NCBI GenBank assembly: GCA_002269645.1
Contig: NIVC01001459.1
Coordinates: forward strand, 1 to 64,000
From: Macrostomum lignano
Taxonomy: Eukaryota
DNA length: 64,000 bases
Reading direction: 5' to 3'
The position numbers were made by a program, and so were the translations under genes. The notes below the pieces were generated by a model, which was not told where the DNA came from, ran no database searches, and saw only the letters and a program-made list of their open reading frames with translations. Shown here piece after piece: positions 3,723 to 58,847 of the stretch (its first letter is position 1; each line of letters begins with the position of its first letter).

Positions 3723-4504
3723 ACAATTTAGAAACATTTCCGAATTTAGCGCAGTCTCCCCTCATTTATAGTACTTACATGTATAAACCGCAATATTTTC
3801 CATTGTTTGAAAAAAAACAAAGCTATTTTTTGTTATAAAAAAGTAAATTTTCAAATTTTCATACCTATATACTCAAAACCGCTTTTCAAACTTGCTCTAA
3901 CAAAAATTTCAGTTTAATTTGCTTTTCTGCCCAAGTCTAAATTTTTCGCTTCTGCAAATGCTGCTACTAACAGTAATTGAATGTATTTTAATATTTTTAT
4001 TGTTGTCACTAATCTGTCTGTGAACAAAAACAGCTGCTTTTAACTTTCATGCCGAATTGTGAAACTAGAAAAAATTCGCCCCAGACTCACCTAAAAAAGC
4101 ATTTTTGTAAAGCCTTTGCATATAAGCGATTACTAAAACAGCATATCGCACTACTTAATCCTACTTCTATTTGATAGTAGTATAAAATGCGCATCAATAT
4201 TGTTCTATTTGTATTGTGCTAGCTTATTGGCAATAATTTCTTTGGAAAATGATTAAATTTTAGTTCAACTTAATTATGTGAATTAAGTGCATGTTTAATA
4301 TTCGAATTCTCTAAGCTTAATTTTATGAACTTTTTGTCACCGCGCGTTTAAAGTTTAACCAATACAAACTTTTAAATATACTGCCAATATAATGCTGACT
4401 CTGATACTGCAATAATTGCTTTTAACAGCTGCGTACCAGACTCTGCATGGAATAAAATATTTCCTTGCTATTAAAAGATTTTTTTCTTTTTTCTTTGCTC
4501 AAGG

Positions 4505-4710
4505 ACTCACGACTTGAGGGTTGTGGGTTCGATTCCCGATCCCACTGGAACAATTTGTGTCCCTGAGCAAGACACTTAACTCTGCATTGCTTCAGTTCAC
4601 CCAGCTGTAAAATGGGTGCCAGCATTAGCTGGGGTAATTGAGGCTGTGTGTGGCGACCCCCTCCAGTCTTTGGACTGAACAGCCGTACGCAGCCTTCAGA
4701 TGCGCTGCGC
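4505..4710 (+). mobile_element. tRNA-derived CORE-type SINE fragment
   Basis: B-box-like GGGTTCGATTCCC at about 4526, then TGTGTCCCTGAGCAAGACACTTAAC...CAGCTGTAAAATGGG, resembling the MIR/CORE domain (TGTGACCTTGGGCAAGTTACTTAAC...CATCTGTAAAATGGG). Confidence 0.7.
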
Positions 4711-4754
4711 AATAGCTGCGGCTGAGCTGTCGGTTGCACATCTGCCCATTAGTA

Positions 4755-10060: not shown

Positions 10061-27392
<17,332 letters not shown>

Positions 27393-28544: not shown

Positions 28545-29865
28545 ACATTTGTCCTGTCAATGTCCTCTCTGTGTCCTGCCAATGTCCTCCCTGTGTCCTG
28601 CCAATGTCTTCCCTGTGTCCTTCCAATGTCCTCCAGCTGTGTCCTTCCAATGTCCTCCCTGTGTCCTTCCAATGTCCTTCTGTGTCCTTCCAAAGTCCTC
28701 CCTGTGTCCTTCCAATGTCCTCCTTGTGCCCTTCCAATGTCCTCTCTGTGCCCTTCCAATGTCCTCTCTGTGTCCTTCCAATGTCCTCTCTGTGTCCTTC
28801 CAATGTCCTCTCTGTGTCCTGCCAATGTCCTCCCTGTGTCCTTCCAATGTCCTTCTGTGTCCTTCCAAAGTCCTCTCTGTGTCCTTCCAATATCCTCCCT
28901 GTGTCCTGCCAATGTCCTCCAGCTGTGTCCTGCCAATGTCCTCCCTGTGTCCTTCCAATATCCTCCCTGTGTCCTTCCAATATCCTCCCTGTGTCCTGCC
29001 AATGTCCTCCCTGTGTCCTTCCAATGTCCTCCCTGTGTCCTTCCAATATCCTCCCTGTGTCCAGCCAATGTCCTCCCTGTGTCCTGCCAATGTCCTCCCT
29101 GTGTCCTTCCAATGTCCTCCCTGTGTCCTGCCAATATCCTCCCTGTGTCCTGCCAATATCCTCCGTGTCCTGCCAATGTCCTCCAGCTGTGTCCTGCCAA
29201 TGTCCTCCCTGTGTCCTACCAATTTCCTCCCTGTGTCCTACCAATTTCCTCCCTGTGTCCTTCCAATGTCCTTCTGTGTCCTTCCAAAGTCCTCCCTGTG
29301 TCCTTCCAATGTCCTCCTTGTGTCCTTCCAATGTCCTCTCTGTGTCCTTCCAATGTCCTCCCTGTGTCCTTCCAATATCCTCCCTGTGTCCTTCCAATAT
29401 CCTCCCTGTGTCCTTCCAATATCCTCCCTGTGTCCTGCCAATGTCATCCAGCTGTGTCCTGCCAATGTCCTCCCTGTGTCCTACCAATTTCCTCCCTGTG
29501 TCCTTCCAATGTCCTTCTGTGTCCTTCCAAAGTCCTCCCTGTGTCCTTCCAATGTCCTCCTTGTGTCCTTCCAATGTCCTCTCTGTGTCCTTCCAATGTC
29601 CTCCCTGTGTCCTTCCAATATCCTCCCTGTGTCCTTCCAATATCCTCCCTGTGTCCTGCCAATGTCCTCCAGCTGTGTCCTGCCAATGTCCTCCCTGTGT
29701 CCTGCCAATGTCCTCCAGCTGTGTCCTGCCAATGTCCTCCCTGTGTCCTGCCAATGTCATCCCTGTGTCCTGCCAATGTCCTCCCTGTGTCCTTCCAATA
29801 TCCTCCCTGTGTCCTTCCAATATCCTCCCTGTGTCCAGCCAATGTCCTCCCTGTGTCCTGCCAGT
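28545..29865. repeat. About 22-bp minisatellite (GTGTCCTTCCAATGTCCTCCCT)
   Basis: Tandem copies with higher-order variants. Confidence 0.95.
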
Positions 29866-31594: not shown

Positions 31595-32563
31595 CTAAAT
31601 ATGGTAGGTAGGCTTGTACATCTGATCAAATCGTCCCAGGTGCTTAGCAACCAGCTCGTCAATCAGGAGGCTGTCCGCCTCATCAAAGTATCCACGCCAG
31701 TCGCCAACCTCGCCGCGTCGATAAAAACCGGTGCCCCGACCTTCGCCCTGGGCAAACAGGTGGCCCATATCGCTGCCTCGGTCGCGCCTCATCCGGTCGA
31801 ATCCAACGGCATCGCAGATTCCAGTCAACAGCTCCTCAGTGAGCTCGGAAGCACCTTCCGGCATCAAGAATCGATCGAGTTTTCGAATGACCTCAGCTGG
31901 ATTCGCTTTCAACTGCTCGTACTCAACTAGGATGACCCGATCAGCTGGCAGCTCTCCGCTAGCCAGAGAGGCAAGCAGCATCTCATTGTGCTCAAAATAC
32001 GAACCACCATCCAAAGTGCCGGGCACAAAGAGACCTTTTAGAAAGGCTTGAAATTTACCACTGTACTTGTAATCGGCAATCCGAGTGTAGTGATGATACA
32101 GCGATACAGCCACATCCTTTGGATTCCTAATTGGGCAGATGATCTTAACGCCATTAGACTGCAAAATCTGCTTTGGCAGAAGCGGCCAAGGCAGGTGACA
32201 ATTCAACAGCCTTGGAGACGGTTGCGCATTCAAGACTGGCAGCTCAACAAACTCAAGCATCAGCTTCTCCTTGTTCACCGGACGCTGATGGCACTGCCGG
32301 CTGAGCAGGAAGTGGCAGATCTCGTGCAGCCAATGGGTGCCGCATTTCAGGTAGGCCCAGATCAGCACATCATCTTGGCGAGGCTGGAATTCGCTTGGAC
32401 AGTGCAGCTTCTCTAATCTGTCTTCGATTCCCGTGAAGTCAACGACATAGTAACCGCGCCACAGGCGGCATTGAACTTCGTTGGCGTCGGTGTCTTGGCG
32501 AGTTACTTTGCCTTCGATCGGGGCGCCAGTTTGCGGGTCTAGATGGGGCGATTTTGTCGCCAT
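31595..32563 (-). CDS. Cytosolic sulfotransferase (SULT1-like), intronless, 322 aa
   Basis: FQPRQDDVLIWAYLKCGTHW (5'-PSB loop), SPRLLNCHLPW (catalytic His), RNPKDVAVSLYHHY (3'-PB), YEQLK, FYRRGEVGDW. Confidence 0.92.
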   Translation of the reverse strand: MATKSPHLDPQTGAPIEGKVTRQDTDANEVQCRLWRGYYVVDFTGIEDRLEKLHCPSEFQPRQDDVLIWAYLKCGTHWLHEICHFLLSRQCHQRPVNKEKLMLEFVELPVLNAQPSPRLLNCHLPWPLLPKQILQSNGVKIICPIRNPKDVAVSLYHHYTRIADYKYSGKFQAFLKGLFVPGTLDGGSYFEHNEMLLASLASGELPADRVILVEYEQLKANPAEVIRKLDRFLMPEGASELTEELLTGICDAVGFDRMRRDRGSDMGHLFAQGEGRGTGFYRRGEVGDWRGYFDEADSLLIDELVAKHLGRFDQMYKPTYHI

Positions 32564-52113: not shown

Positions 52114-52370
52114 TCACACCGCCTATTTCGTTTTCGCGTATTCTGTGGTAGCGCAACATGATGCAAAACCGAAAAATACTGTAGAGAAAGTGGAGAAGTA
52201 ATAGAGGAATGCAAAATACTACATTGAATTAGTAGGGGTCCTTTGTAGACAGTGACAGCGGGCGCGAAATAAAGTCTATGTATAGAAGTAAAGGCGTTTT
52301 TGTCATAGACAGTTGCAGCGGGCGCAACATGTTCTTGAAACGTATTCAAGAATACAAAATTATTCTTGAT

Positions 52371-52782
52371 GAGAATTTGTCTATGGTTAGAATGACTCCG
52401 TCCCCGCACCCCCGCTTGGTGAGAATTTGTCTATGGTTAGAATGACTCCGTCCCCGCACCCCCGCTTGGTGAGAATTTGTCTATGGTTAGAATGACTCCG
52501 TCCCCGCACCCCCGCTTGGTGAGAATTTGTCTATGGTTAGAATGACTCCGTCCCCGCACCCCCGCTTGGTGAGAATTTGTCTATGGTTAGAATGACTCCG
52601 TCCCCGCACCCCCGCTAGGTGAGAATTTGTCTATGGTTAGAATGACTCCGTCCCCGCACCCCCGCTAGGTGAGAATTTGTCTATGGTTAGAATGACTCCG
52701 TCCCCGCACCCCCGCTAGGTGAGAATTTGTCTATGGTTAGAATGACTCCGTCCCCGCACCCCCGCTTGGTGAGAATTTGTCT
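52371..52782. repeat. 50-bp near-perfect tandem repeat (GAGAATTTGTCTATGGTTAGAATGACTCCGTCCCCGCACCCCCGCT(T/A)GGT)
   Basis: 8 copies plus a partial, differing at one site. Confidence 0.96.
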
Positions 52783-52927: not shown

Positions 52928-53628
52928 TTATACAATGTTACTAATTTTGTCACTGAACAACTACTATGCGCACTGAATTAAATTGCGTTACAAGCGTAAT
53001 AACAGTTAAGTAACGAAAGTAATTAATTCTCTACAAATAACTCCGCAAGCTCCGTACCGACGCGACTGGAACCGTCAGCCAACTGCTTGGACCTGTCGAC
53101 CAGAAACGCTGAGAAATCGCATCCCCGTCCCTACCTCATTAGGCTGCGCTGCTGTCTCACAATCCAGAATTTTATTGGCAAATGCGCCCAAAAGAGCAAA
53201 TTATATCTCATATCTTGTCTCTAATCTGCTCCGACTATCTAGTGCCGCATCGGCCCACCAGCGAGTGCCAAAGCTGTGAAATATTGCCATCAATTAAACA
53301 GATCCGCTGCAAACGGTGACAGGCATCGCAGCAGCGCTGAATTATGGGTGCATTAGGGCATAAGCGCTTAGAGAGGCTATGCGGCCTGTGGGCAGTGGCA
53401 TCCCAACGACCGTGACATTCTATTCAAAGTTGTGAAGGATTAATTAATTAAAGCAAAAACTTGGAGCCTCCAATCGACTAAATACACTCGTATAGGCAGC
53501 AGAGCTAAATTCTTCATTGGTTTTTTATGAGCTAATTTTATCCAAAAGTGTAGACATAATATTAAACAGAGCTTTAAAAAGCTATTCGATTTTGGTACAG
53601 CCCTACACTAAAGAGTTCGCTGAGAAGA

Positions 53629-56600
53629 ATGAAATCAGCCGCGAGCAGCAGCTCCGGGGCATCAGAGAGGCCCCGCTCAGCCGTGCGCCAGTTCTGTGGC
53701 TACACGACCGCCCACGGCCTGGGCCGCTTCTCCGAGCAGTCTACCTTTTTCGGCAGGCTCATCTGGGTCTCTTTTCTGCTGGGCACCTACGGCGGCTTTG
53801 TCTATCACCTGTACACCCTGTTCGACAGGTTTGCCCAGGCTCCTGTGCTCACCACAATGACCGTGTCCTCGCTGCCGTTCCAGTTCCCGGATGTGTACAT
53901 CTGCCCGACGCAGGCGAACACCATGAGCAAGGCCATTAAGTCTCTGACCGAATTTGGAGTTACCGATACGGAGTTCCTTACCAAGAGGACCATCGACGAG
54001 AAGATTGGATTTTACGCTTTTGACATTAAAAACAGTGACTTCAACCAGATGACGATGGCACTGCTGAGCGTCCTGGAAAGCACAGAAGAGTCACTGATGG
54101 CGAAGTTTCAGTTTCCAGCACGTGGTGAGCACTCTGCTATTTGAAAACTCTTTGCCAGAGCAGCATTCCATATATCTGAGCTCTTATCTGACAAAATCCC
54201 TATTCAAAATTTGAGCCATGAGAAACTTGCTTTAGGCTTTGAGGATATCGGGCTGCATAAGTTTTCCTCAAAAACATGTTAGAGAACCGAGCCGAGTGTC
54301 GGACAACGCTCTCAGGCGAGGAATACTCTGGCGACGTGAGTTCAGCAGTTGTCTACGGATTTGCCACCATGACAGTCACGTCTGTGAACACCTCGGCATT
54401 CGAGCCCAGTCCGTACAGAGCGCTTAGATCGTGCATACCATGGAATGATGCAGCTCGGATGCTGCATAGTACAAGCGCCAGCCTAGCCAACAGGCTGCTG
54501 TCACTCAAATTTTCCGACGACGAGTCCCGCTGTCGCTCGCCGCCCGGACTGCCGCTGTCTAAGCTTCTGCCGTTTGCATCTCGTGAGTCAAGAAAATTCA
54601 GAGATGAGAAAGTTCTAACAAAAAATAAAGCATCGCACGTTGCTGATTTTCCAGGACCAACGTTACAGCTTATCGACTGCTTCCCAAAAAAGACTGTGGA
54701 TGCATTATTTCTTGTCTGCTCGGAGCTCCAAATCATCACTTATGAATCCTGCGCCGAATGCTGCGCCAGACTCCATTTCCCGTACGTGGCCCTCCAGCCC
54801 CTGTCGTGCCGATGCGGCTTCAGCATCAGCGGCATCAAGAATACGTCCGACACGTGCAACAGTTATTGCAAGAACGACAGCACAAGAGTTTGCGGCTCGG
54901 CTACTAGCGCTACGGTTCTGCAGATTCGGCACAATGGTGAGTGAATCATTCAACCATGTAGGCCCGAGTTCGGAGAGCATCAGGAGGCATTTTAACCGAC
55001 AGCTCAGATCCTATAAATCGTCTGTATTCGTCTAATTTCCTATTTCCTGTTTTTAGCATCAAAGGCGCTGCACATAGGAAACTTCAGCCAGTTGACGCCG
55101 CAGGCGCACGGGCCCTACTGCTTCTTTAGAGATGAGATTGGCAAGCTGAATGCCGGCTTCTGTGAAATCCCCTTTTGCCGAATTTGTAAGTCCAATCCGC
55201 CGCAGTGATGAACTTCATCGCCAAAGTCTCGAGAAAATTAGCTTCTAGGCTCAAACTGCTCACTTTTCAGCCAAATCTAAGACCTACGACTGTGCTGTGA
55301 GCTCATCAGACAAGCACGTAGAGCAGCTGAAGCTCTCTCGGTATACGGGATGGACGAATGTCACCGCCTCCGGCAGACGATGCATGCCTTGGAGTAAATT
55401 GCTGAGAATCGAGGAGCTGGTTAAAACGCGCAGTCAGTACCGCCTGATTTACTTGAAGCTCTCACAATCTAGCAAAAATGCATTCTCAGCTTGAATTCCT
55501 ACCTTCATGCAGTATTCGCCCTGGCTGAGGCTTTGAAAAATATCTACATCCGAGTTCCCGACGAAATCGAGAACAGCGAGGACAACTTCTGCCGCTCAGC
55601 GAGCATTGTGGTCGACTCCGTCCCAAGTTGGGATGAAACTATGATAATGTGAGTTCAAAACTGAGTTCGTGACAAATCTTTGCACGAGTATGAGTTCCAA
55701 GCTTTAAATAAACAGACCAATAAAGCTTTTCTTCCATCTCAGGCGGCACAGCGTCTTTAGCTCAAGCGTGCCAATTTGCATCCCGGAAGACTTTCTCGTC
55801 GGACTGGCGACACCGCAGATTATGGGTTTCGTCTCATTTTTCGAATTGTCGGTAGAGACCTGCGATATACCGAAGTGCTGTGAGTTTTGAGCCTTTTAGA
55901 GAAAAAACTGTAAGACAGCTAATGACTGTTTGAATTTAATCGGCATTTTTAGACACCACTGCCCCCAGCGTGACTAGCGCTATCAGCGATTCGGTTGGCA
56001 GACACCTGCTGGCTCGCCAGTTCGGCAGCGACCTCGGTGTCAGCCTCGTTGAGTGCAGCTTTGCTGGCCAGAAGTGCACCAAGGAAGACTTTGTGAACTT
56101 CGCCCACCCGCAGCTGGGCATGTGTCACCAGTTTCTCAAGCAGCGCTTCACCGCCAACATGAGCAGCACGCAGTTGGCAGAGAGCCAGCTGTCAGTCAAG
56201 TACTTCACGGACTCGACAGACGCAAAGGGACAGACGTTGTCAAATATTGACAAGCTGACGCGGGTGGTGCGAGGAGGCCGCAGTGCTGATGCCAGACAGA
56301 CAGCATTCAAGGTGAGTCTTTGACGGCTGCTTACACTGACACTGAACAGTGCTCACTCTCATACTGAACAGTGCTCACTCTCACACTGAACAGCTGAACA
56401 GTGCTCACTCTCAACTGAACAGTGCTCACTCTCAACTGAACAGTGCTCACTCTCATACTGAACAATACTCACTCTCACACTGAGCAATCACCTGAGCCTC
56501 CATTGCGAACTTGAAGGCCGTCATCGTACCGGAGGGATCCTTCCCATGGGCTTCAAAGAGCATCGACGTGGCCACCGCTCAGCGCATGGACGTGCAGCTT

Positions 56601-57912
56601 AGCTTGAACAAGTACTCGAAACTGTCCAGCGCATCCAGGCCCTGCACGGAGACCACAAAACCGGTCACATATCGACTGCCGTCCTGGAACATGCCACCAT
56701 CGAATGAAAATTTCAAGTACTAATCTGTATCCTGCTTTGGGGAATTAACCTGTGCTAACTTGTGCTAATATCGTTATTACGCTATGAATTCATTTACGTC
56801 GTACTAATACTAACCTTGGCTCCAGAATTGATTGGGCCGCAAAAAGGATCATTTCAACCAACGGCTGGACACGGAAACTGTCGATGCTGCGCGAGACGCT
56901 GCTGAACAACAGCGGCCCAAGGTTAGTAGTGCCAGCAGGTGAAGTGCTCCTGAAGTTATTGTTAACTGCGGAAATTGTCACAACAAACGAAAAGTACTTC
57001 GCAATTTCAGCATCCTGACCGATGCGGGCCGCCTGTTTGACATCCCCGATCGAGGCGATTGCGTCAACACCTACGTCGTGCAGGCCTTCCTTGACAACTG
57101 CAGATGCCTGCCGTCGATTCTGCCCATCAAAGACGAGCTGCTCGCCAATTTCAGTTACTGCTTCAACATCAAGGATGCTGATAACATTTCTGACGACACT
57201 GAGAGGTGCTACATTGATCAGATGTCCCGGATTACACAATATCAATATGAGGCTACAAAACTCTGCAAGCCGCTGTGCAGCACCTTCGAATACACCAGCC
57301 GCTTCATCCCCTACGCCTGGCCGAACCTGCATTTCATGCAGTCGCTCGAGTTCCTGCGGCAGCTGGCTTCGGACTTCGGCTACCGGCACAACATCAGCCG
57401 GCTGAAGGGTGTCTCCAGCCTGTACTATGCATATCTGAGAGCTCAGAGACTCGCAGACACGCCAGTTAGCAAAATCAGCAGCGCCGAGTCTCAGAGCTTT
57501 GATGTGGAGCTGACGGCGCTGGAAAACCGGCTGGCTCAGCTAACCGTCCAGGCTGAGCGGCCATTCGGCCAGGAGGTCTCGGAGGAGCCGGCCTACCCCG
57601 CCAAGAACCTCCTGGCCGACATTGGAGGTAAGAAATCATTTTGAGTGGTTTTGGCATCGGCAGCGCGAATTCCGTCAGTTTCAATCGGATTGCTTTTCAG
57701 GCGCCCTGGGTCTCTGGTCCGGCATCTCCATTCTCACTGTCTGCGAGTTGCTGGAGCTCTTCATCTACCTGGGGCAGGAGCTGGTCCTGAGGATGCGGCG
57801 ACAGCCCTCCAAGAGGCAGCCAGGAGACAACAACGAGCCTGACTTACCGTCTAAGGTAGAGATGGAGTCGGAGATGAACGCGGCTGAGAATGAAAGAGTA
57901 ACTCATTTTTGA
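53629..57912 (+). CDS. DEG/ENaC (ASC family) channel with kringle and WSC insertions, about 1,000 aa; exons 53629-54124, 54262-54936, 55057-55185, 55271-55393 (or 55432), 55513-55648, 55743-55879, 55953-56311, 56517-56716, 57011-57627, 57701-57912
   Basis: FCGYTTAHG pre-TM1 motif, TM1, FPDVYIC, CSFAGQKC..DF..GMCHQF, cysteine-rich thumb (DC..DNCRC..YC..C..CKPLC), LLADIGGALGLWSGISILTVCELLEL (TM2, GxS filter). Exon lengths sum to 3,084 nt with GT-AG junctions. A possible extra 72-bp in-frame intron at 54583-54654. Confidence 0.88.
56335..56485. repeat. About 20-22-bp repeat (ACTGAACAGTGCTCACTCTC) in an ENaC intron
   Basis: About 6 copies. Confidence 0.85.
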
Positions 57913-58018
57913 TTGAAGAGAAATCCTTGCTAAAATTCTGGGGCAGTCAGTGCACGGACGAATGAAGTAGAAGGACGCTGCACTTCCTAATCAAGAAAAT
58001 TTTCTGGACCCTCAAAAG

Positions 58019-58847
58019 GTTCCTGGACACTTCGTCATCTTACCACTTCGTCATCCACTCATTTTTCTAGACACTTCGTCATCTTACCACTTCGTCATCT
58101 ACGATACTATTGTGGACACATCGTCATCTACTCCCTGGACACTTCGTCATCCACTTTGTCTAAAAAACTTAGCTATATGTAACTTCGTCAGCTAAGTTGT
58201 ATCGAGTAGTCATAAATATAGGTGGCTACACTGAGGATTAACTAACTGATTAACTAACTGATAATTAATGAGGATTAACTACGACGGGGGAAGAGCTGGA
58301 GAAGAGAAGAGATCGCGATCGCGATCAGTACAAAATTGAATTTTACTCGCGGTTTAAATCATACAATATCTTGGAATTTTACAGTAAAACAAAAATAACA
58401 ATAAATTGGAAATATGCATGCCTGAATAGCAAAATTAAATGAAACTTAAAAAACATAATAATAAATACACAAAAACACACTATTCATAAACATATTTAAA
58501 TCTACATCGTTACAACTCCACACATGTTTGTGGAAGCGAAGCTAAAATAAAATTACAATGAACACTTGTACACATACAGCGTGCATTTAGATGCCAATCC
58601 CTAAACGTGTATTTAATCCTATATTTTACAGACTATTGATTGAGAAACAATTTACATGCATAAAAAAAACAATCGAATAACAATTTTACAGCTTTGAGAA
58701 ATCTTGGGATGACGAAGTGTCCTCAAAATTTGGTCACTTCGTCATCTAGATTTCTAACAATTTTTTTTGTCTGACGAAGCGTCCAAAAACCATGGTCACT
58801 TCGTCATCTGGATGACGAACTGGTAAGATGACGAAGTGTCCAGGAAC
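58019..58847. mobile_element. 829-bp MITE / non-autonomous DNA transposon
   Basis: TIR GTTCCTGGACACTTCGTCATCTTACCA(C/G)TTCGTCATCCA, about 38 bp; subterminal CACTTCGTCATC repeats at both ends; AT-rich core; no clear TSD. Confidence 0.85.

What the first reader, a model, noticed from the sequence alone, without database searches (positions are those of the whole stretch)
53629..57912. DEG/ENaC channel carrying two kringles and a WSC domain in its extracellular finger region
Seen: between the post-TM1 FPDVYIC strand and the CSF.G..C segment, exons 2-6 add about 400 aa. They contain two complete six-cysteine kringle patterns (K1: AEC..GEEYSG..SCIPW..SRCRSP..GPYC..GFCEIPFC; K2: YDC..RYTGWTNVTASGRRCMPW..DNFCRS..PIC..ETCDIPKC) and an eight-cysteine WSC pattern (IDC..ESCAECC..SCRCG..TCNSYC..RVCGS). 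Established: this is the variable finger region, where ENaC is activated by proteolysis and FaNaC binds peptide; kringle plus WSC is the Kremen ectodomain pairing; WSC domains are linked to glycan binding and kringles to protein binding. Inference: a trimeric ion channel with a built-in receptor ectodomain, possibly gated by glycans, proteins or matrix tethers. I cannot say whether this architecture is already listed in flatworm proteomes, and I know of no functional description.
Basis: partly seen in the sequence, partly recalled or inferred. Interest (0 to 1): 0.9.

Follow-up and report, generated by a model that had tools for sequence, protein, structure and literature searches.

The report
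Flatworm sodium channel with kringle-WSC insert
This is an intact gene of the flatworm Macrostomum lignano for a DEG/ENaC-type sodium channel subunit whose outer "finger" carries a 382-residue, cysteine-rich add-on (a WSC domain nested inside one kringle-like domain, followed by a second kringle-like domain); the design is shared by at least seven paralogues in this species, sits unremarked in databases, and puts a receptor-like module on the part of the channel that normally senses the opening signal.

Summary
Window 53629-57912 (+) assembles into a clean 12-exon, all GT-AG gene of 1041 codons. The product is a DEG/ENaC subunit (Pfam ASC E=3e-38) with the HG motif, FPDVYIC, a Cys-rich thumb and a FaNaC-like G-I-S filter. 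Exons 2-7 insert 382 residues into the finger.

The WSC domain passes Pfam's cut-off. Both kringles fall below it, but family profiles match canonical kringles end to end (hhalign 97-98%; controls at most 1.4%).

Both kringles are expanded to about 135 residues. A confident AlphaFold model of kringle 2 found no kringle in the PDB, so the kringle fold is unverified.

The window is M. lignano (a neighbouring gene is 99% identical). This gene is an unannotated paralogue, 58% identical to Mlig006056. The family has at least seven deep paralogues and keeps 21 of the 22 insert cysteines everywhere. Its GenBank models come from RNA-seq. I found the full insert in no other organism and no paper describing it.

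The gating role is inference only. C. elegans EGAS (EGF plus ASC) is a precedent. I rate it a new variant of a known kind, interest about 0.6.

The parts
53629..54124 (+). Exon 1 (aa 1-166, ends in phase 1). It holds the cytoplasmic N-terminus with the HG motif (53713-53718), TM1 (aa 40-62, 53746-53814), the post-TM1 FPDVYIC strand (53884-53904) and the N-terminal part of the finger.
   Evidence: Gene model. Motifs and hydropathy. Aligns to FaNaC residues 5-84 / 67-154.
54283..54582 (+). Exon 2 (aa 166-266, phase 1-1). This is the N-terminal two thirds of kringle-like domain 1 (Cys1 at 54297-54299, Cys2, Cys3; motifs C-x5-G-x2-Y-x-G, C-x2-W, RCRSP). It carries a family-specific loop of about 20-30 aa before Cys2.
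   Evidence: hhalign of K1 without the WSC exon against canonical kringles: Prob 98.0%, E=3e-13, with controls. It is the most conserved part of the insert (71% identity to Mlig006056; dN/dS about 0.17).
54655..54936 (+). Exon 3 (aa 266-360, phase 1-1). A WSC domain with 10 cysteines, nested in the Cys3-Cys4 loop of kringle 1.
   Evidence: Pfam PF01822 at 36.1 bits alone (cut-off 27.8). The family profile hits yeast Wsc1 7pz2 at E=9.7e-10 and Kremen1 WSC at about 1e-6. Nine of the ten Cys are invariant in 7 paralogues; the tenth is lost only in P0006.
55057..55185 (+). Exon 4 (aa 360-403, phase 1-1). The C-terminal third of kringle-like domain 1 (GPYC, FCEIPFC; Cys4-Cys6, with Cys6 at 55176-55178).
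   Evidence: Pfam Kringle C-terminal half at 14 bits. hhalign. Aligns to the Kremen1 kringle C-terminus.
55271..55432 (+). Exon 5 (aa 403-457, phase 1-1). Start of kringle-like domain 2 (Cys1 at 55291-55293, RYTGWTNVTASGRRCMPW). The donor is revised to 55432|55433.
   Evidence: Pfam Kringle positions 8-53, E=1.6e-5. tPA kringle 2 hit at E=1.7e-4. Donor choice supported.
55513..55648 (+). Exon 6 (aa 457-502, phase 1-2). Middle of kringle-like domain 2 (DNFCRS, Cys3) with a family-specific predicted helix and strands.
55743..55879 (+). Exon 7 (aa 502-548, phase 2-1). End of kringle-like domain 2 (Cys4, Cys5, Cys6 at 55876-55878; ETCDIPKC). It includes a variable hydrophobic loop, aa 519-537.
55953..56311 (+). 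Exon 8 (aa 548-667, starts in phase 1). The last finger helix and the beta-ball (CSFAGQKC at 56054-56077). This is the most conserved segment of the protein.
   Evidence: 80% identity to Mlig006056. Aligns to Aplysia FaNaC 196-227.
56517..56716 (+). Exon 9 (aa 668-734), extracellular domain.
56826..56921 (+). Exon 10 (aa 734-766), extracellular domain.
57011..57627 (+). Exon 11 (aa 766-972). The Cys-rich thumb (57060-57278), palm and pre-TM2 DIGG.
   Evidence: Pfam ASC best stretch, profile positions 298-455. FaNaC alignment. Cysteine positions.
57701..57912 (+). Exon 12 (aa 972-1041 plus the stop). TM2 (57703-57777) with the G-I-S filter (57721-57729) and the cytoplasmic tail. A possible alternative donor at 57897|57898 would replace only the last 5 residues.

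Best explanation
What is shown. This is an intact but so far unannotated Macrostomum lignano gene for a subunit of a lineage-specific DEG/ENaC subfamily. The channel core is complete: the HG gating motif, two transmembrane helices, the post-TM1 strand, beta-ball, Cys-rich thumb and a FaNaC-type G-I-S selectivity filter. A 382-residue module with 22 cysteines and N-glycosylation sequons is spliced into the finger domain. The module is kringle-like domain 1, with a WSC domain nested in its Cys3-Cys4 surface loop, followed directly by kringle-like domain 2.

Origin (inferred). The module looks assembled by exon shuffling. The six insert exons total 1146 nt and are bounded by phase-1 introns on both sides. 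Exons 2, 3, 4 and 5 are each phase 1-1, and the WSC domain is exactly one such exon dropped into a kringle.

How it most likely works (inferred). Three copies of the module crown the trimer at its outer upper corner. In other DEG/ENaCs this region receives the gating input: peptide in FaNaC, protease and ions in ENaC, and proposed matrix tethers in mechanosensory degenerins. The module most likely binds an extracellular partner, a glycan or glycoprotein of mucus or matrix via the WSC domain, or a protein via the kringles. Binding or pulling would then be passed through the finger helices to the pore, making this a Na+ channel with a built-in receptor or tether.

My confidence is about 0.9 for the architecture and about 0.35 for partner-dependent gating.
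For: Gene and architecture:
- One ORF over 12 GT-AG exons.
- The same 11 intron positions occur in paralogue Mlig006056.
- The protein aligns colinearly at 58% identity over 1043 columns with its 1049-aa product.

Domains:
- ASC E=3e-38, and WSC above Pfam's cut-off.
- Both kringles at 97-98% hhalign probability against Pfam-verified kringles, with clean controls.
- PDB profile hits are only WSC and kringle entries.

Transcripts: the GenBank BOX15_Mlig models that carry the full architecture (Mlig006056, Mlig007204/028168, Mlig026586) are ORFs of an RNA-seq-derived, genome-guided transcriptome (PMC5730564). The insert is therefore in mature mRNA in the paralogues.

Selection:
- 21 of 22 insert cysteines are invariant in 7 paralogues that are only 31-59% identical overall.
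- dN/dS is about 0.27 for the insert and 0.33 for the core; K1a is 0.17.

Topology: the module lies between TM1 and TM2 and has 6 NxS/T sequons.

Position in the finger, and the importance of that corner for gating: and PMC11026163.
Against: - There is no functional, expression or binding data for any family member.
- This particular paralogue has no transcript-derived protein in a database of 5.8 billion clusters.
- The kringles lack the size of canonical kringles, and by inspection of the alignment they also lack the Asp-x-Asp / Trp lysine-binding residues.
- The AlphaFold K2 model (pLDDT 80) found no PDB match with E below 0.39, so even the kringle fold is unverified.
- The WSC part is the least constrained piece apart from its cysteines (39% identity, dN/dS about 0.6). 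That is odd for a conserved ligand site.
- C. elegans EGAS channels, the nearest precedent, gave no currents in oocytes (PMC10424705). Extra domains therefore do not by themselves reveal a stimulus.
Confidence: 0.5

Rival explanations
1. The module is a structural or localisation add-on rather than a gate. It would anchor, cluster or shield the channel at a glycan-rich surface, or control assembly and trafficking of particular heteromers among the many paralogues, while gating is set by something else such as pH, a peptide or constitutive activity.
For: The most conserved parts are K1a and the adjoining beta-ball (71% and 80% identity). That fits a domain packed against the core rather than a free ligand site. 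The WSC surface evolves fast. Kremen1's KR-WSC-CUB forms a rigid scaffold (PMC5014086). Deep paralogy would suit a code for which subunits assemble together.
Against: The insertion point is the gating-relevant finger corner. A 382-residue mass on the alpha1-alpha3 helices is unlikely to be neutral for gating.
Confidence: 0.25
2. The insert exons are cassette exons. The main product is a conventional channel with exon 1 joined to exon 8, or lacking only the WSC exon, and the long form is a minor or regulated isoform.
For: Exon 1 ends in phase 1 and exon 8 starts in phase 1. Exons 2, 3, 4 and 5 are each phase 1-1, so skipping any of them, or all of exons 2-7, keeps the frame.
Against: The transcript-derived GenBank models of three paralogue groups contain all insert exons. 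The insert is under purifying selection with invariant cysteines. No insert-less close relative appeared in the searches. The short ASC-only hits cover about the length of the region after the insert and look like C-terminal fragments, but they were not aligned.
Confidence: 0.1
3. This particular copy is a silent or recently dead paralogue, even though the family as a whole is functional.
For: It has no match above 59% identity among predicted proteins, although the GenBank annotation is RNA-seq based and discarded novel transcripts below RPKM 0.5. The surrounding region is extremely repeat-rich.
Against: 1041 codons without a stop, 22 canonical splice sites, all 22 insert cysteines and all channel motifs are intact. 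dN/dS against the nearest paralogue is about 0.3.
Confidence: 0.1
4. The module is an autoinhibitory plug that is released by proteolysis, like the ENaC GRIP domain.
For: It occupies the same general region, the finger. The window copy has an RENR motif at the module's N-terminal border.
Against: RENR is not conserved in any paralogue. There is no R-x-[KR]-R motif at either border. A disulfide-locked module of three domains is far larger than the ENaC inhibitory tracts.
Confidence: 0.05
5. The model is an annotation artefact: a separate secreted kringle/WSC gene lying inside an intron of a channel gene.
For: None beyond the unusual domain combination.
Against: Phases match at both borders. There is no independent start codon with a signal peptide and no stop within exons 2-7. 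The same arrangement occurs in at least 7 paralogues, including transcript-derived ORFs.
Confidence: 0.03

Closest known systems
Macrostomum lignano BOX15_Mlig006056 (PAA48513.1 / A0A267DGV9) and its paralogues Mlig007204/028168, Mlig013355, Mlig034226/026586, A0A1I8IV52, A0A1I8HN37, A0A1I8FAW6
   Same: They share the TM1-finger-K1[WSC]-K2-ASC-TM2 architecture, the same intron positions and nearly all insert cysteines (21 of 22 invariant), at 31-59% identity.
   Different: The window gene is a distinct paralogue with no annotated counterpart. The database entries are unnamed ('hypothetical', 'WSC domain-containing') and I found no paper that mentions them.
[quoted passage not shown]
   Same: They are DEG/ENaC subunits that carry an extra extracellular adhesion-type module (PMC10424705). 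They are the precedent for a channel plus a built-in ectodomain.
   Different: The module is EGF, not kringle/WSC, and it arose independently. I did not check where the EGF module sits. No stimulus is known for these channels either.
FMRFamide-gated Na+ channels (FaNaC; PDB 7yvb, 8on7)
   Same: They are the best-scoring solved structures for the channel core (E=2.9e-14 and 9e-13). They have the same G-I-S filter and DIGG-x-LGLW pre-TM2 motif. Their ligand pocket is built by the finger helices that are split by the insert here.
   Different: Similarity is only weak and limited to TM1/beta1, beta-ball and TM2. FaNaC has no inserted domains. The M. lignano genes tested with FMRFamide-type peptides (Mlig049925, Mlig051885, Mlig041003) are not from this family.
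ENaC GRIP domain (finger insertion cleaved by furin or prostasin)
   Same: It is a large, lineage-specific finger insertion that controls gating (PMC6197857, listed).
   Different: There are no conserved furin sites here. This insert consists of recognisable shuffled modules, not a family-specific beta-sheet with inhibitory peptides.
Kremen1/2 ectodomain (Kringle-WSC-CUB)
   Same: It combines kringle and WSC domains on one cell-surface protein. The family profile hits Kremen1 WSC at about 1e-6 and its kringle C-terminus.
   Different: Kremen's domains are in series and include a CUB domain. Here the WSC domain is nested inside kringle 1, a second kringle follows and there is no CUB. The WSC scores higher against yeast Wsc1, so descent from a Kremen gene is not indicated.
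MEC-4/MEC-10 touch channel with matrix proteins MEC-1, MEC-5 and MEC-9 (tether model)
   Same: The concept is an extracellular matrix link to the DEG/ENaC ectodomain. The finger corner is a proposed tether site (PMC11026163).
   Different: In nematodes the putative tethers are separate proteins. Here matrix-type domains are part of the channel polypeptide. No mechanosensory evidence exists for the flatworm family.

Membership tests
DEG/ENaC (Pfam ASC, PF00858) | Significant match to the family profile | tested here: met
   E=3.4e-38, 132 bits against a cut-off of 23.6, in 3 stretches interrupted by the insert. PDB hits are FaNaC, Ppk26, ENaC, ASIC and BASIC only.
DEG/ENaC (Pfam ASC, PF00858) | Two transmembrane helices flanking a large ectodomain, with an N-terminal HG motif | tested here: met
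   Hydropathy peaks at aa 40-58 (KD 1.35) and aa 975-993 (KD 1.63). HG at aa 29-30, within the TTAHGLGR motif shared with the paralogues.
DEG/ENaC (Pfam ASC, PF00858) | Post-TM1 FPxxTxC strand, Cys-rich thumb and a G/S-x-S selectivity filter in TM2 | tested here: met
   FPDVYIC at aa 86-92. Seven Cys at aa 783-855. DIGGALGLWSGISILT with G-I-S at aa 979-981, as in FaNaC.
DEG/ENaC (Pfam ASC, PF00858) | Forms a trimeric, amiloride-sensitive cation channel | not testable with these tools
   Needs expression and electrophysiology.
WSC domain (PF01822) | Profile match above the curated cut-off | tested here: met
   29.5 bits in context and 36.1 bits for the exon alone, against a cut-off of 27.8. Wsc1 7pz2 at E=9.7e-10 with the family profile.
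WSC domain (PF01822) | Eight conserved cysteines | tested here: met
   All are aligned with Wsc1 and Kremen1. The family has two additional cysteines. Of the 10, nine are invariant and one is lost only in P0006.
WSC domain (PF01822) | Carbohydrate binding | not testable with these tools
   Needs glycan array or binding assays.
Kringle (PF00051) | Profile match above the curated cut-off | tested here: not met
   K2 scores 23-26 bits and K1 14 bits, against a cut-off of 34.3. The precomputed Pfam column lists no kringle for any paralogue.
Kringle (PF00051) | Homology to canonical kringles by a profile-profile method, with six cysteines in register | tested here: met
   K1 minus WSC: Prob 98.0%, E=3e-13, template positions 1-87. 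K2: Prob 97.2%, E=3e-11. Controls at most 1.4%. All six Cys align in MAFFT with 23 kringles. UniProt names K2 fragments 'Kringle domain-containing'.
Kringle (PF00051) | Compact triple-loop fold of about 80 residues | tested here: inconclusive
   Cys1-Cys6 spans 138 aa in K2, and 230 aa in K1 (about 135 without the WSC exon). The AlphaFold K2 model (pLDDT 80.3) has 3 helices and 3 long strands from the family-specific loops. It has no Foldseek PDB match with E below 0.39.
Kringle (PF00051) | Lysine-binding pocket (Asp55/Asp57, Trp62, Trp72); this is not a defining feature of all kringles | tested here: not met
   In the hhalign and MAFFT alignments the CRNPDxD loop is replaced by the WSC-bearing insertion in K1 and by a 30-aa loop in K2. 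PWC becomes PYC in K1 and PIC in K2.
Kremen-type receptor ectodomain | Serial Kringle-WSC-CUB followed by a single TM | tested here: not met
   The order is K1[WSC]-K2 inside a two-TM channel, with no CUB hit.
EGAS-type DEG/ENaC (EGF plus ASC) | EGF domain attached to an ASC channel | tested here: not met
   No EGF hit. This is an analogy of principle only.

The most novel reading that the evidence does not exclude
The family would be a natural receptor-channel fusion. The K1[WSC]-K2 crown would bind a defined extracellular glycan or matrix protein, and that binding, or force transmitted through it, would directly open a Na+ pore. This would be a self-tethered mechano- or glyco-sensor, diversified into at least 7 paralogues for different partners. 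A WSC domain nested in a kringle loop would also be a domain-in-domain arrangement that I have not seen described for kringles (recall only; no literature or structure search was made for it).
Probability: 0.25. Interest if true: 0.85.

Novelty: new variant of a known kind. Interest (0 to 1): 0.6.

Why it matters
How force or extracellular ligands reach the gate of DEG/ENaC channels is still argued. The tether model for nematode touch channels relies on separate matrix proteins whose contact with the channel has not been shown directly.

This flatworm family has matrix- or receptor-type domains covalently built into the finger, the region that transmits peptide, proton and protease signals in relatives. 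M. lignano allows transgenesis (PMC5730564); RNAi and in situ hybridisation are, to my knowledge, routine in this animal.

Simple with-and-without-insert and domain-swap experiments could test whether an extracellular anchor can gate this channel class. The locus is also a clear case of exon shuffling, a phase 1-1 WSC exon inserted inside a kringle, which then created a lineage-specific expansion of ion channels.

The limits are that everything functional is inferred, and the sequences have been in public databases since 2016-2017 without comment.

Tried and rejected

2. A possible 99-nt in-frame mini-intron inside exon 2 (GTGAGT...TTAG, about 54331-54429, seen by eye) was rejected. The paralogues keep this segment as coding sequence with a near-invariant Pro-Tyr (P209 invariant).

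3. AlphaFold on the whole insert of Mlig006056 with 5 sequences gave pLDDT 50.7 and was unusable.

4. I tried to deepen that alignment with WSC domains and canonical kringles. MAFFT laid the kringle N-halves over the WSC columns, both whole and split, so I abandoned it. Only K2 could be modelled.

5. Foldseek of the K2 model against the PDB found no kringle and no significant hit at all.

Structure and distribution work therefore used the M. lignano paralogues as proxies.

7. No synteny was found between the window and the Mlig006056 contig beyond a shared repeat.

8. Literature searches found no description. The terms were ENaC or degenerin with kringle and WSC, Macrostomum with ENaC or kringle, and six Mlig gene identifiers.

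9. The idea that the window is another Macrostomum species, raised because the best hit is only 58% identical, was rejected. The neighbouring sulfotransferase is 99% identical to an M. lignano protein. A very close sibling species cannot be excluded.

10. Furin-type activation sites: none are conserved.

Full report
**1. What is in the sequence**

Reading 53000-58800 and translating three frames shows a string of open segments on the + strand. They join through canonical GT-AG introns of 72-205 nt into one ORF.

After one correction the model has 12 exons:
- 53629-54124
- 54283-54582
- 54655-54936
- 55057-55185
- 55271-55432
- 55513-55648
- 55743-55879
- 55953-56311
- 56517-56716
- 56826-56921
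- 57011-57627
- 57701-57912

It encodes 1041 aa.

The correction concerns exon 5. Two phase-compatible donors exist. The later one (55432|55433) keeps 13 residues (SKLLRIEELVKTR) that every paralogue conserves. The M. lignano gene Mlig006056 splices at the homologous point.

A tblastn of the model on the window finds only this one locus.

**2. Organism and relatives**

The full protein finds only eight database proteins, all from Macrostomum lignano. The best is BOX15_Mlig006056g1 (1049 aa), 58% identical and colinear over the whole length.

A single-exon sulfotransferase gene 21 kb upstream in the window (31595-32563, minus strand) is 99% identical to M. lignano BOX15_Mlig009372g2. The window is therefore M. 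lignano or a very close sibling. The channel gene is a paralogue with no annotated counterpart: nothing above 59% identity was found in 5.8 billion protein clusters, whether I searched with the whole protein or with the insert-deleted core.

Exact mapping of the Mlig006056 protein onto its contig (L001) gives the same 11 intron positions, plus one extra tiny 3' exon.

The GenBank BOX15 models are ORFs of an RNA-seq-based, genome-guided transcriptome (PMC5730564). For the paralogues, the complete architecture is therefore supported by mature transcripts.

**3. The channel core**

- Pfam ASC matches at E=3.4e-38.
- With the insert deleted, the best solved relatives are Aplysia FaNaC (7yvb, E=2.9e-14) and Malacoceros FaNaC1 (8on7, E=9e-13). 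Ppk26, ENaC, ASIC and BASIC follow.
- The HG motif, TM1, FPDVYIC, CSFAGQKC, a seven-cysteine thumb, DIGG-x-LGLW and a G-I-S filter in TM2 are all present.
- Nothing suggests a dead pore.

**4. The insert**

Exons 2-7 add 382 residues between the segments that align to FaNaC1 residues 5-84 and 169-201. That interval is the one containing finger helices alpha1-alpha3, which form the FMRFamide pocket (PMC11026163).

*WSC.* Exon 3 alone scores 36.1 bits against Pfam WSC (cut-off 27.8). A profile of the family insert hits yeast Wsc1 (7pz2, E=9.7e-10) and Kremen1 WSC (about 1e-6).

*Kringles.* Pfam is sub-threshold: K2 scores 23-26 bits over its N-terminal half and K1 14 bits over its C-terminal half, against a cut-off of 34.3. 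Other evidence supports homology:
- The PDB profile search returns only kringle entries besides WSC ones (tPA K2 at E=1.7e-4, plus HGF, ROR1/2, urokinase and plasminogen).
- A scan of 1.84 billion representative proteins returns Pfam-verified multi-kringle proteins at E of about 1e-15 to 1e-22.
- hhalign of the seven-paralogue alignments against 23 canonical kringles gives Prob 97.2% (E=3e-11) for K2 and 98.0% (E=3e-13, template 1-87) for K1 with the WSC exon removed.
- WSC-versus-kringle, reversed and ten column-shuffled controls give at most 1.4%.
- UniProt already names two K2-bearing fragments 'Kringle domain-containing protein'.

*Nesting.* The hhalign alignment shows where the extra sequence sits. 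K1 has a loop of about 23 residues before Cys2. It has about 125 residues, the WSC exon plus linkers, between CR-x-P (Cys3) and P-x-C (Cys4). K2 has about 15, 20 and 15 extra residues in three loops.

*Fold.* With canonical kringles in the alignment, AlphaFold models K2 confidently (pLDDT 80.3, pTM 0.71). The model has three helices and three long strands contributed by the family-specific loops. Foldseek finds no PDB match better than E=0.39. I therefore call these kringle-derived modules by sequence and leave the fold unverified. The whole-insert model was too poor to use (pLDDT 50.7).

**5. Evidence of constraint**

- Across seven paralogues that are 31-59% identical overall, 21 of the 22 insert cysteines (6 + 10 + 6) are invariant. 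The other is lost in one paralogue.
- Identity to Mlig006056 by region is: K1a 71%, WSC 39%, K1b 62%, K2 46%, against 62% for the non-insert part and 80% for the beta-ball.
- Nei-Gojobori estimates give dN/dS of about 0.27 for the insert, 0.33 for the core, 0.17 for K1a and 0.6 for WSC. dS is close to saturation, so these are rough.
- The insert has six N-glycosylation sequons and lies between the two TMs.

**6. Origin**

- Exon 1 ends in phase 1 and exon 8 begins in phase 1.
- Exons 2, 3, 4 and 5 are each phase 1-1, and exons 2-7 total 1146 nt.
- This is the classical signature of extracellular module shuffling. The WSC domain is exactly one symmetric exon placed inside a kringle.
- The same arithmetic means that skipping the WSC exon, or all six insert exons, would stay in frame. 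Insert-less isoforms cannot be excluded from sequence alone.

**7. Distribution and prior knowledge**

The insert profile finds the complete module only in M. lignano proteins. These are Mlig006056, A0A1I8IV52, Mlig007204/028168, Mlig013355, the A0A1I8HN37 group, A0A1I8FAW6, Mlig034226/026586 and several fragments. Every other hit I checked with Pfam was a multi-WSC or multi-kringle protein. Annotated proteomes of other macrostomids are probably not in these libraries, so genus-level distribution is open.

Full-text searches found no paper linking DEG/ENaC channels with kringle or WSC domains and none naming these genes. The three M. lignano DEG/ENaCs tested with peptides by Dandamudi et al. 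are other genes.

A precedent in principle exists. C. elegans EGAS proteins are 'EGF plus ASC domain ion channels', and they gave no currents in oocytes (PMC10424705).

**8. How it probably works**

*Shown:* a complete channel subunit with a disulfide-rich, glycosylated, three-domain module in the finger, conserved by selection.

*From established knowledge:* DEG/ENaCs are trimers. The finger corner carries the FaNaC peptide site and ENaC protease and ion sites, and it is a proposed matrix-tether site (PMC11026163). In my recollection, WSC domains occur in fungal wall-stress sensors, Kremen and polycystin-1, and kringles are protein-binding modules.

*Inferred:* the module binds an extracellular glycan or protein and couples that contact to gating.

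*Weaknesses:*
- The canonical lysine-binding residues are absent.
- The WSC surface evolves fast.
- No conserved protease sites flank the module.
- There are no functional data.

The main rival is a scaffold, localisation or assembly role. Minor rivals are cassette splicing, a silent copy, a GRIP-like plug and an annotation artefact.

**9. Verdict**

- Observation: confirmed, with corrections.
- Interpretation: the architecture is supported and the mechanism is untested.
- Novelty: a new, undescribed variant of the DEG/ENaC design, already present but unremarked in M. lignano database entries. The window copy is a new paralogue.
- Interest: about 0.6.

Noticed in passing
window 1-38200: The region is dominated by more than 25 micro- and minisatellite arrays of 0.3-1.5 kb, for example (TCTA)n at 850-2342, (AG)-rich at 20403-21245 and a 22-mer x59 at 28550-29863. 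This explains the many overlapping six-frame 'ORFs' and the extreme GC/AT skews there.
   Followed up: partly
window 31595-32563 (-): A single-exon cytosolic sulfotransferase gene (PF00685, E=3.6e-42), 99% identical to M. lignano BOX15_Mlig009372g2. It identifies the organism.
   Followed up: yes
window 52365-52782: A near-perfect tandem array of a 50-bp unit (8.4 copies, 99% matches) about 850 bp upstream of the channel's start codon. Its function is unknown.
   Followed up: no
window 56341-56483: A 21/22-bp tandem repeat (CTGAACAGTGCTCACTCTCA...) fills most of intron 8 of the channel gene.
   Followed up: no
window 58028-58160 and about 58700-58790: The motif CACTTCGTCATC is repeated just 3' of the stop codon and appears again in inverse orientation about 600 bp further on. 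This could be the ends of a small transposable element.
   Followed up: no
window 55792-55848 (aa 519-537): The stretch FLVGLATPQIMGFVSFFEL in the Cys4-Cys5 loop of kringle 2 is more hydrophobic (KD 1.49) than TM1 (1.35). It is shortened or missing in several paralogues, so it is not a conserved membrane segment, but it could be a lipid- or ligand-contacting loop.
   Followed up: partly
window 57897|57898: AGA|GTAACT is a possible donor at the position where Mlig006056 splices to a tiny 13th exon 1.7 kb downstream. If it is used, only the last five cytoplasmic residues would change.
   Followed up: partly
window 4504-4748; L001 19096-19483: This is the only similarity between the window and the Mlig006056 contig outside the channel gene. 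It is a short repeat with 67-95% translated identity, presumably a shared mobile element.
   Followed up: no
protein P0152 (representative library, organism not given): A 1084-aa protein with seven Pfam kringles followed by a rhodopsin-type 7TM domain. This is another case of kringles fused to a membrane signalling protein.
   Followed up: no
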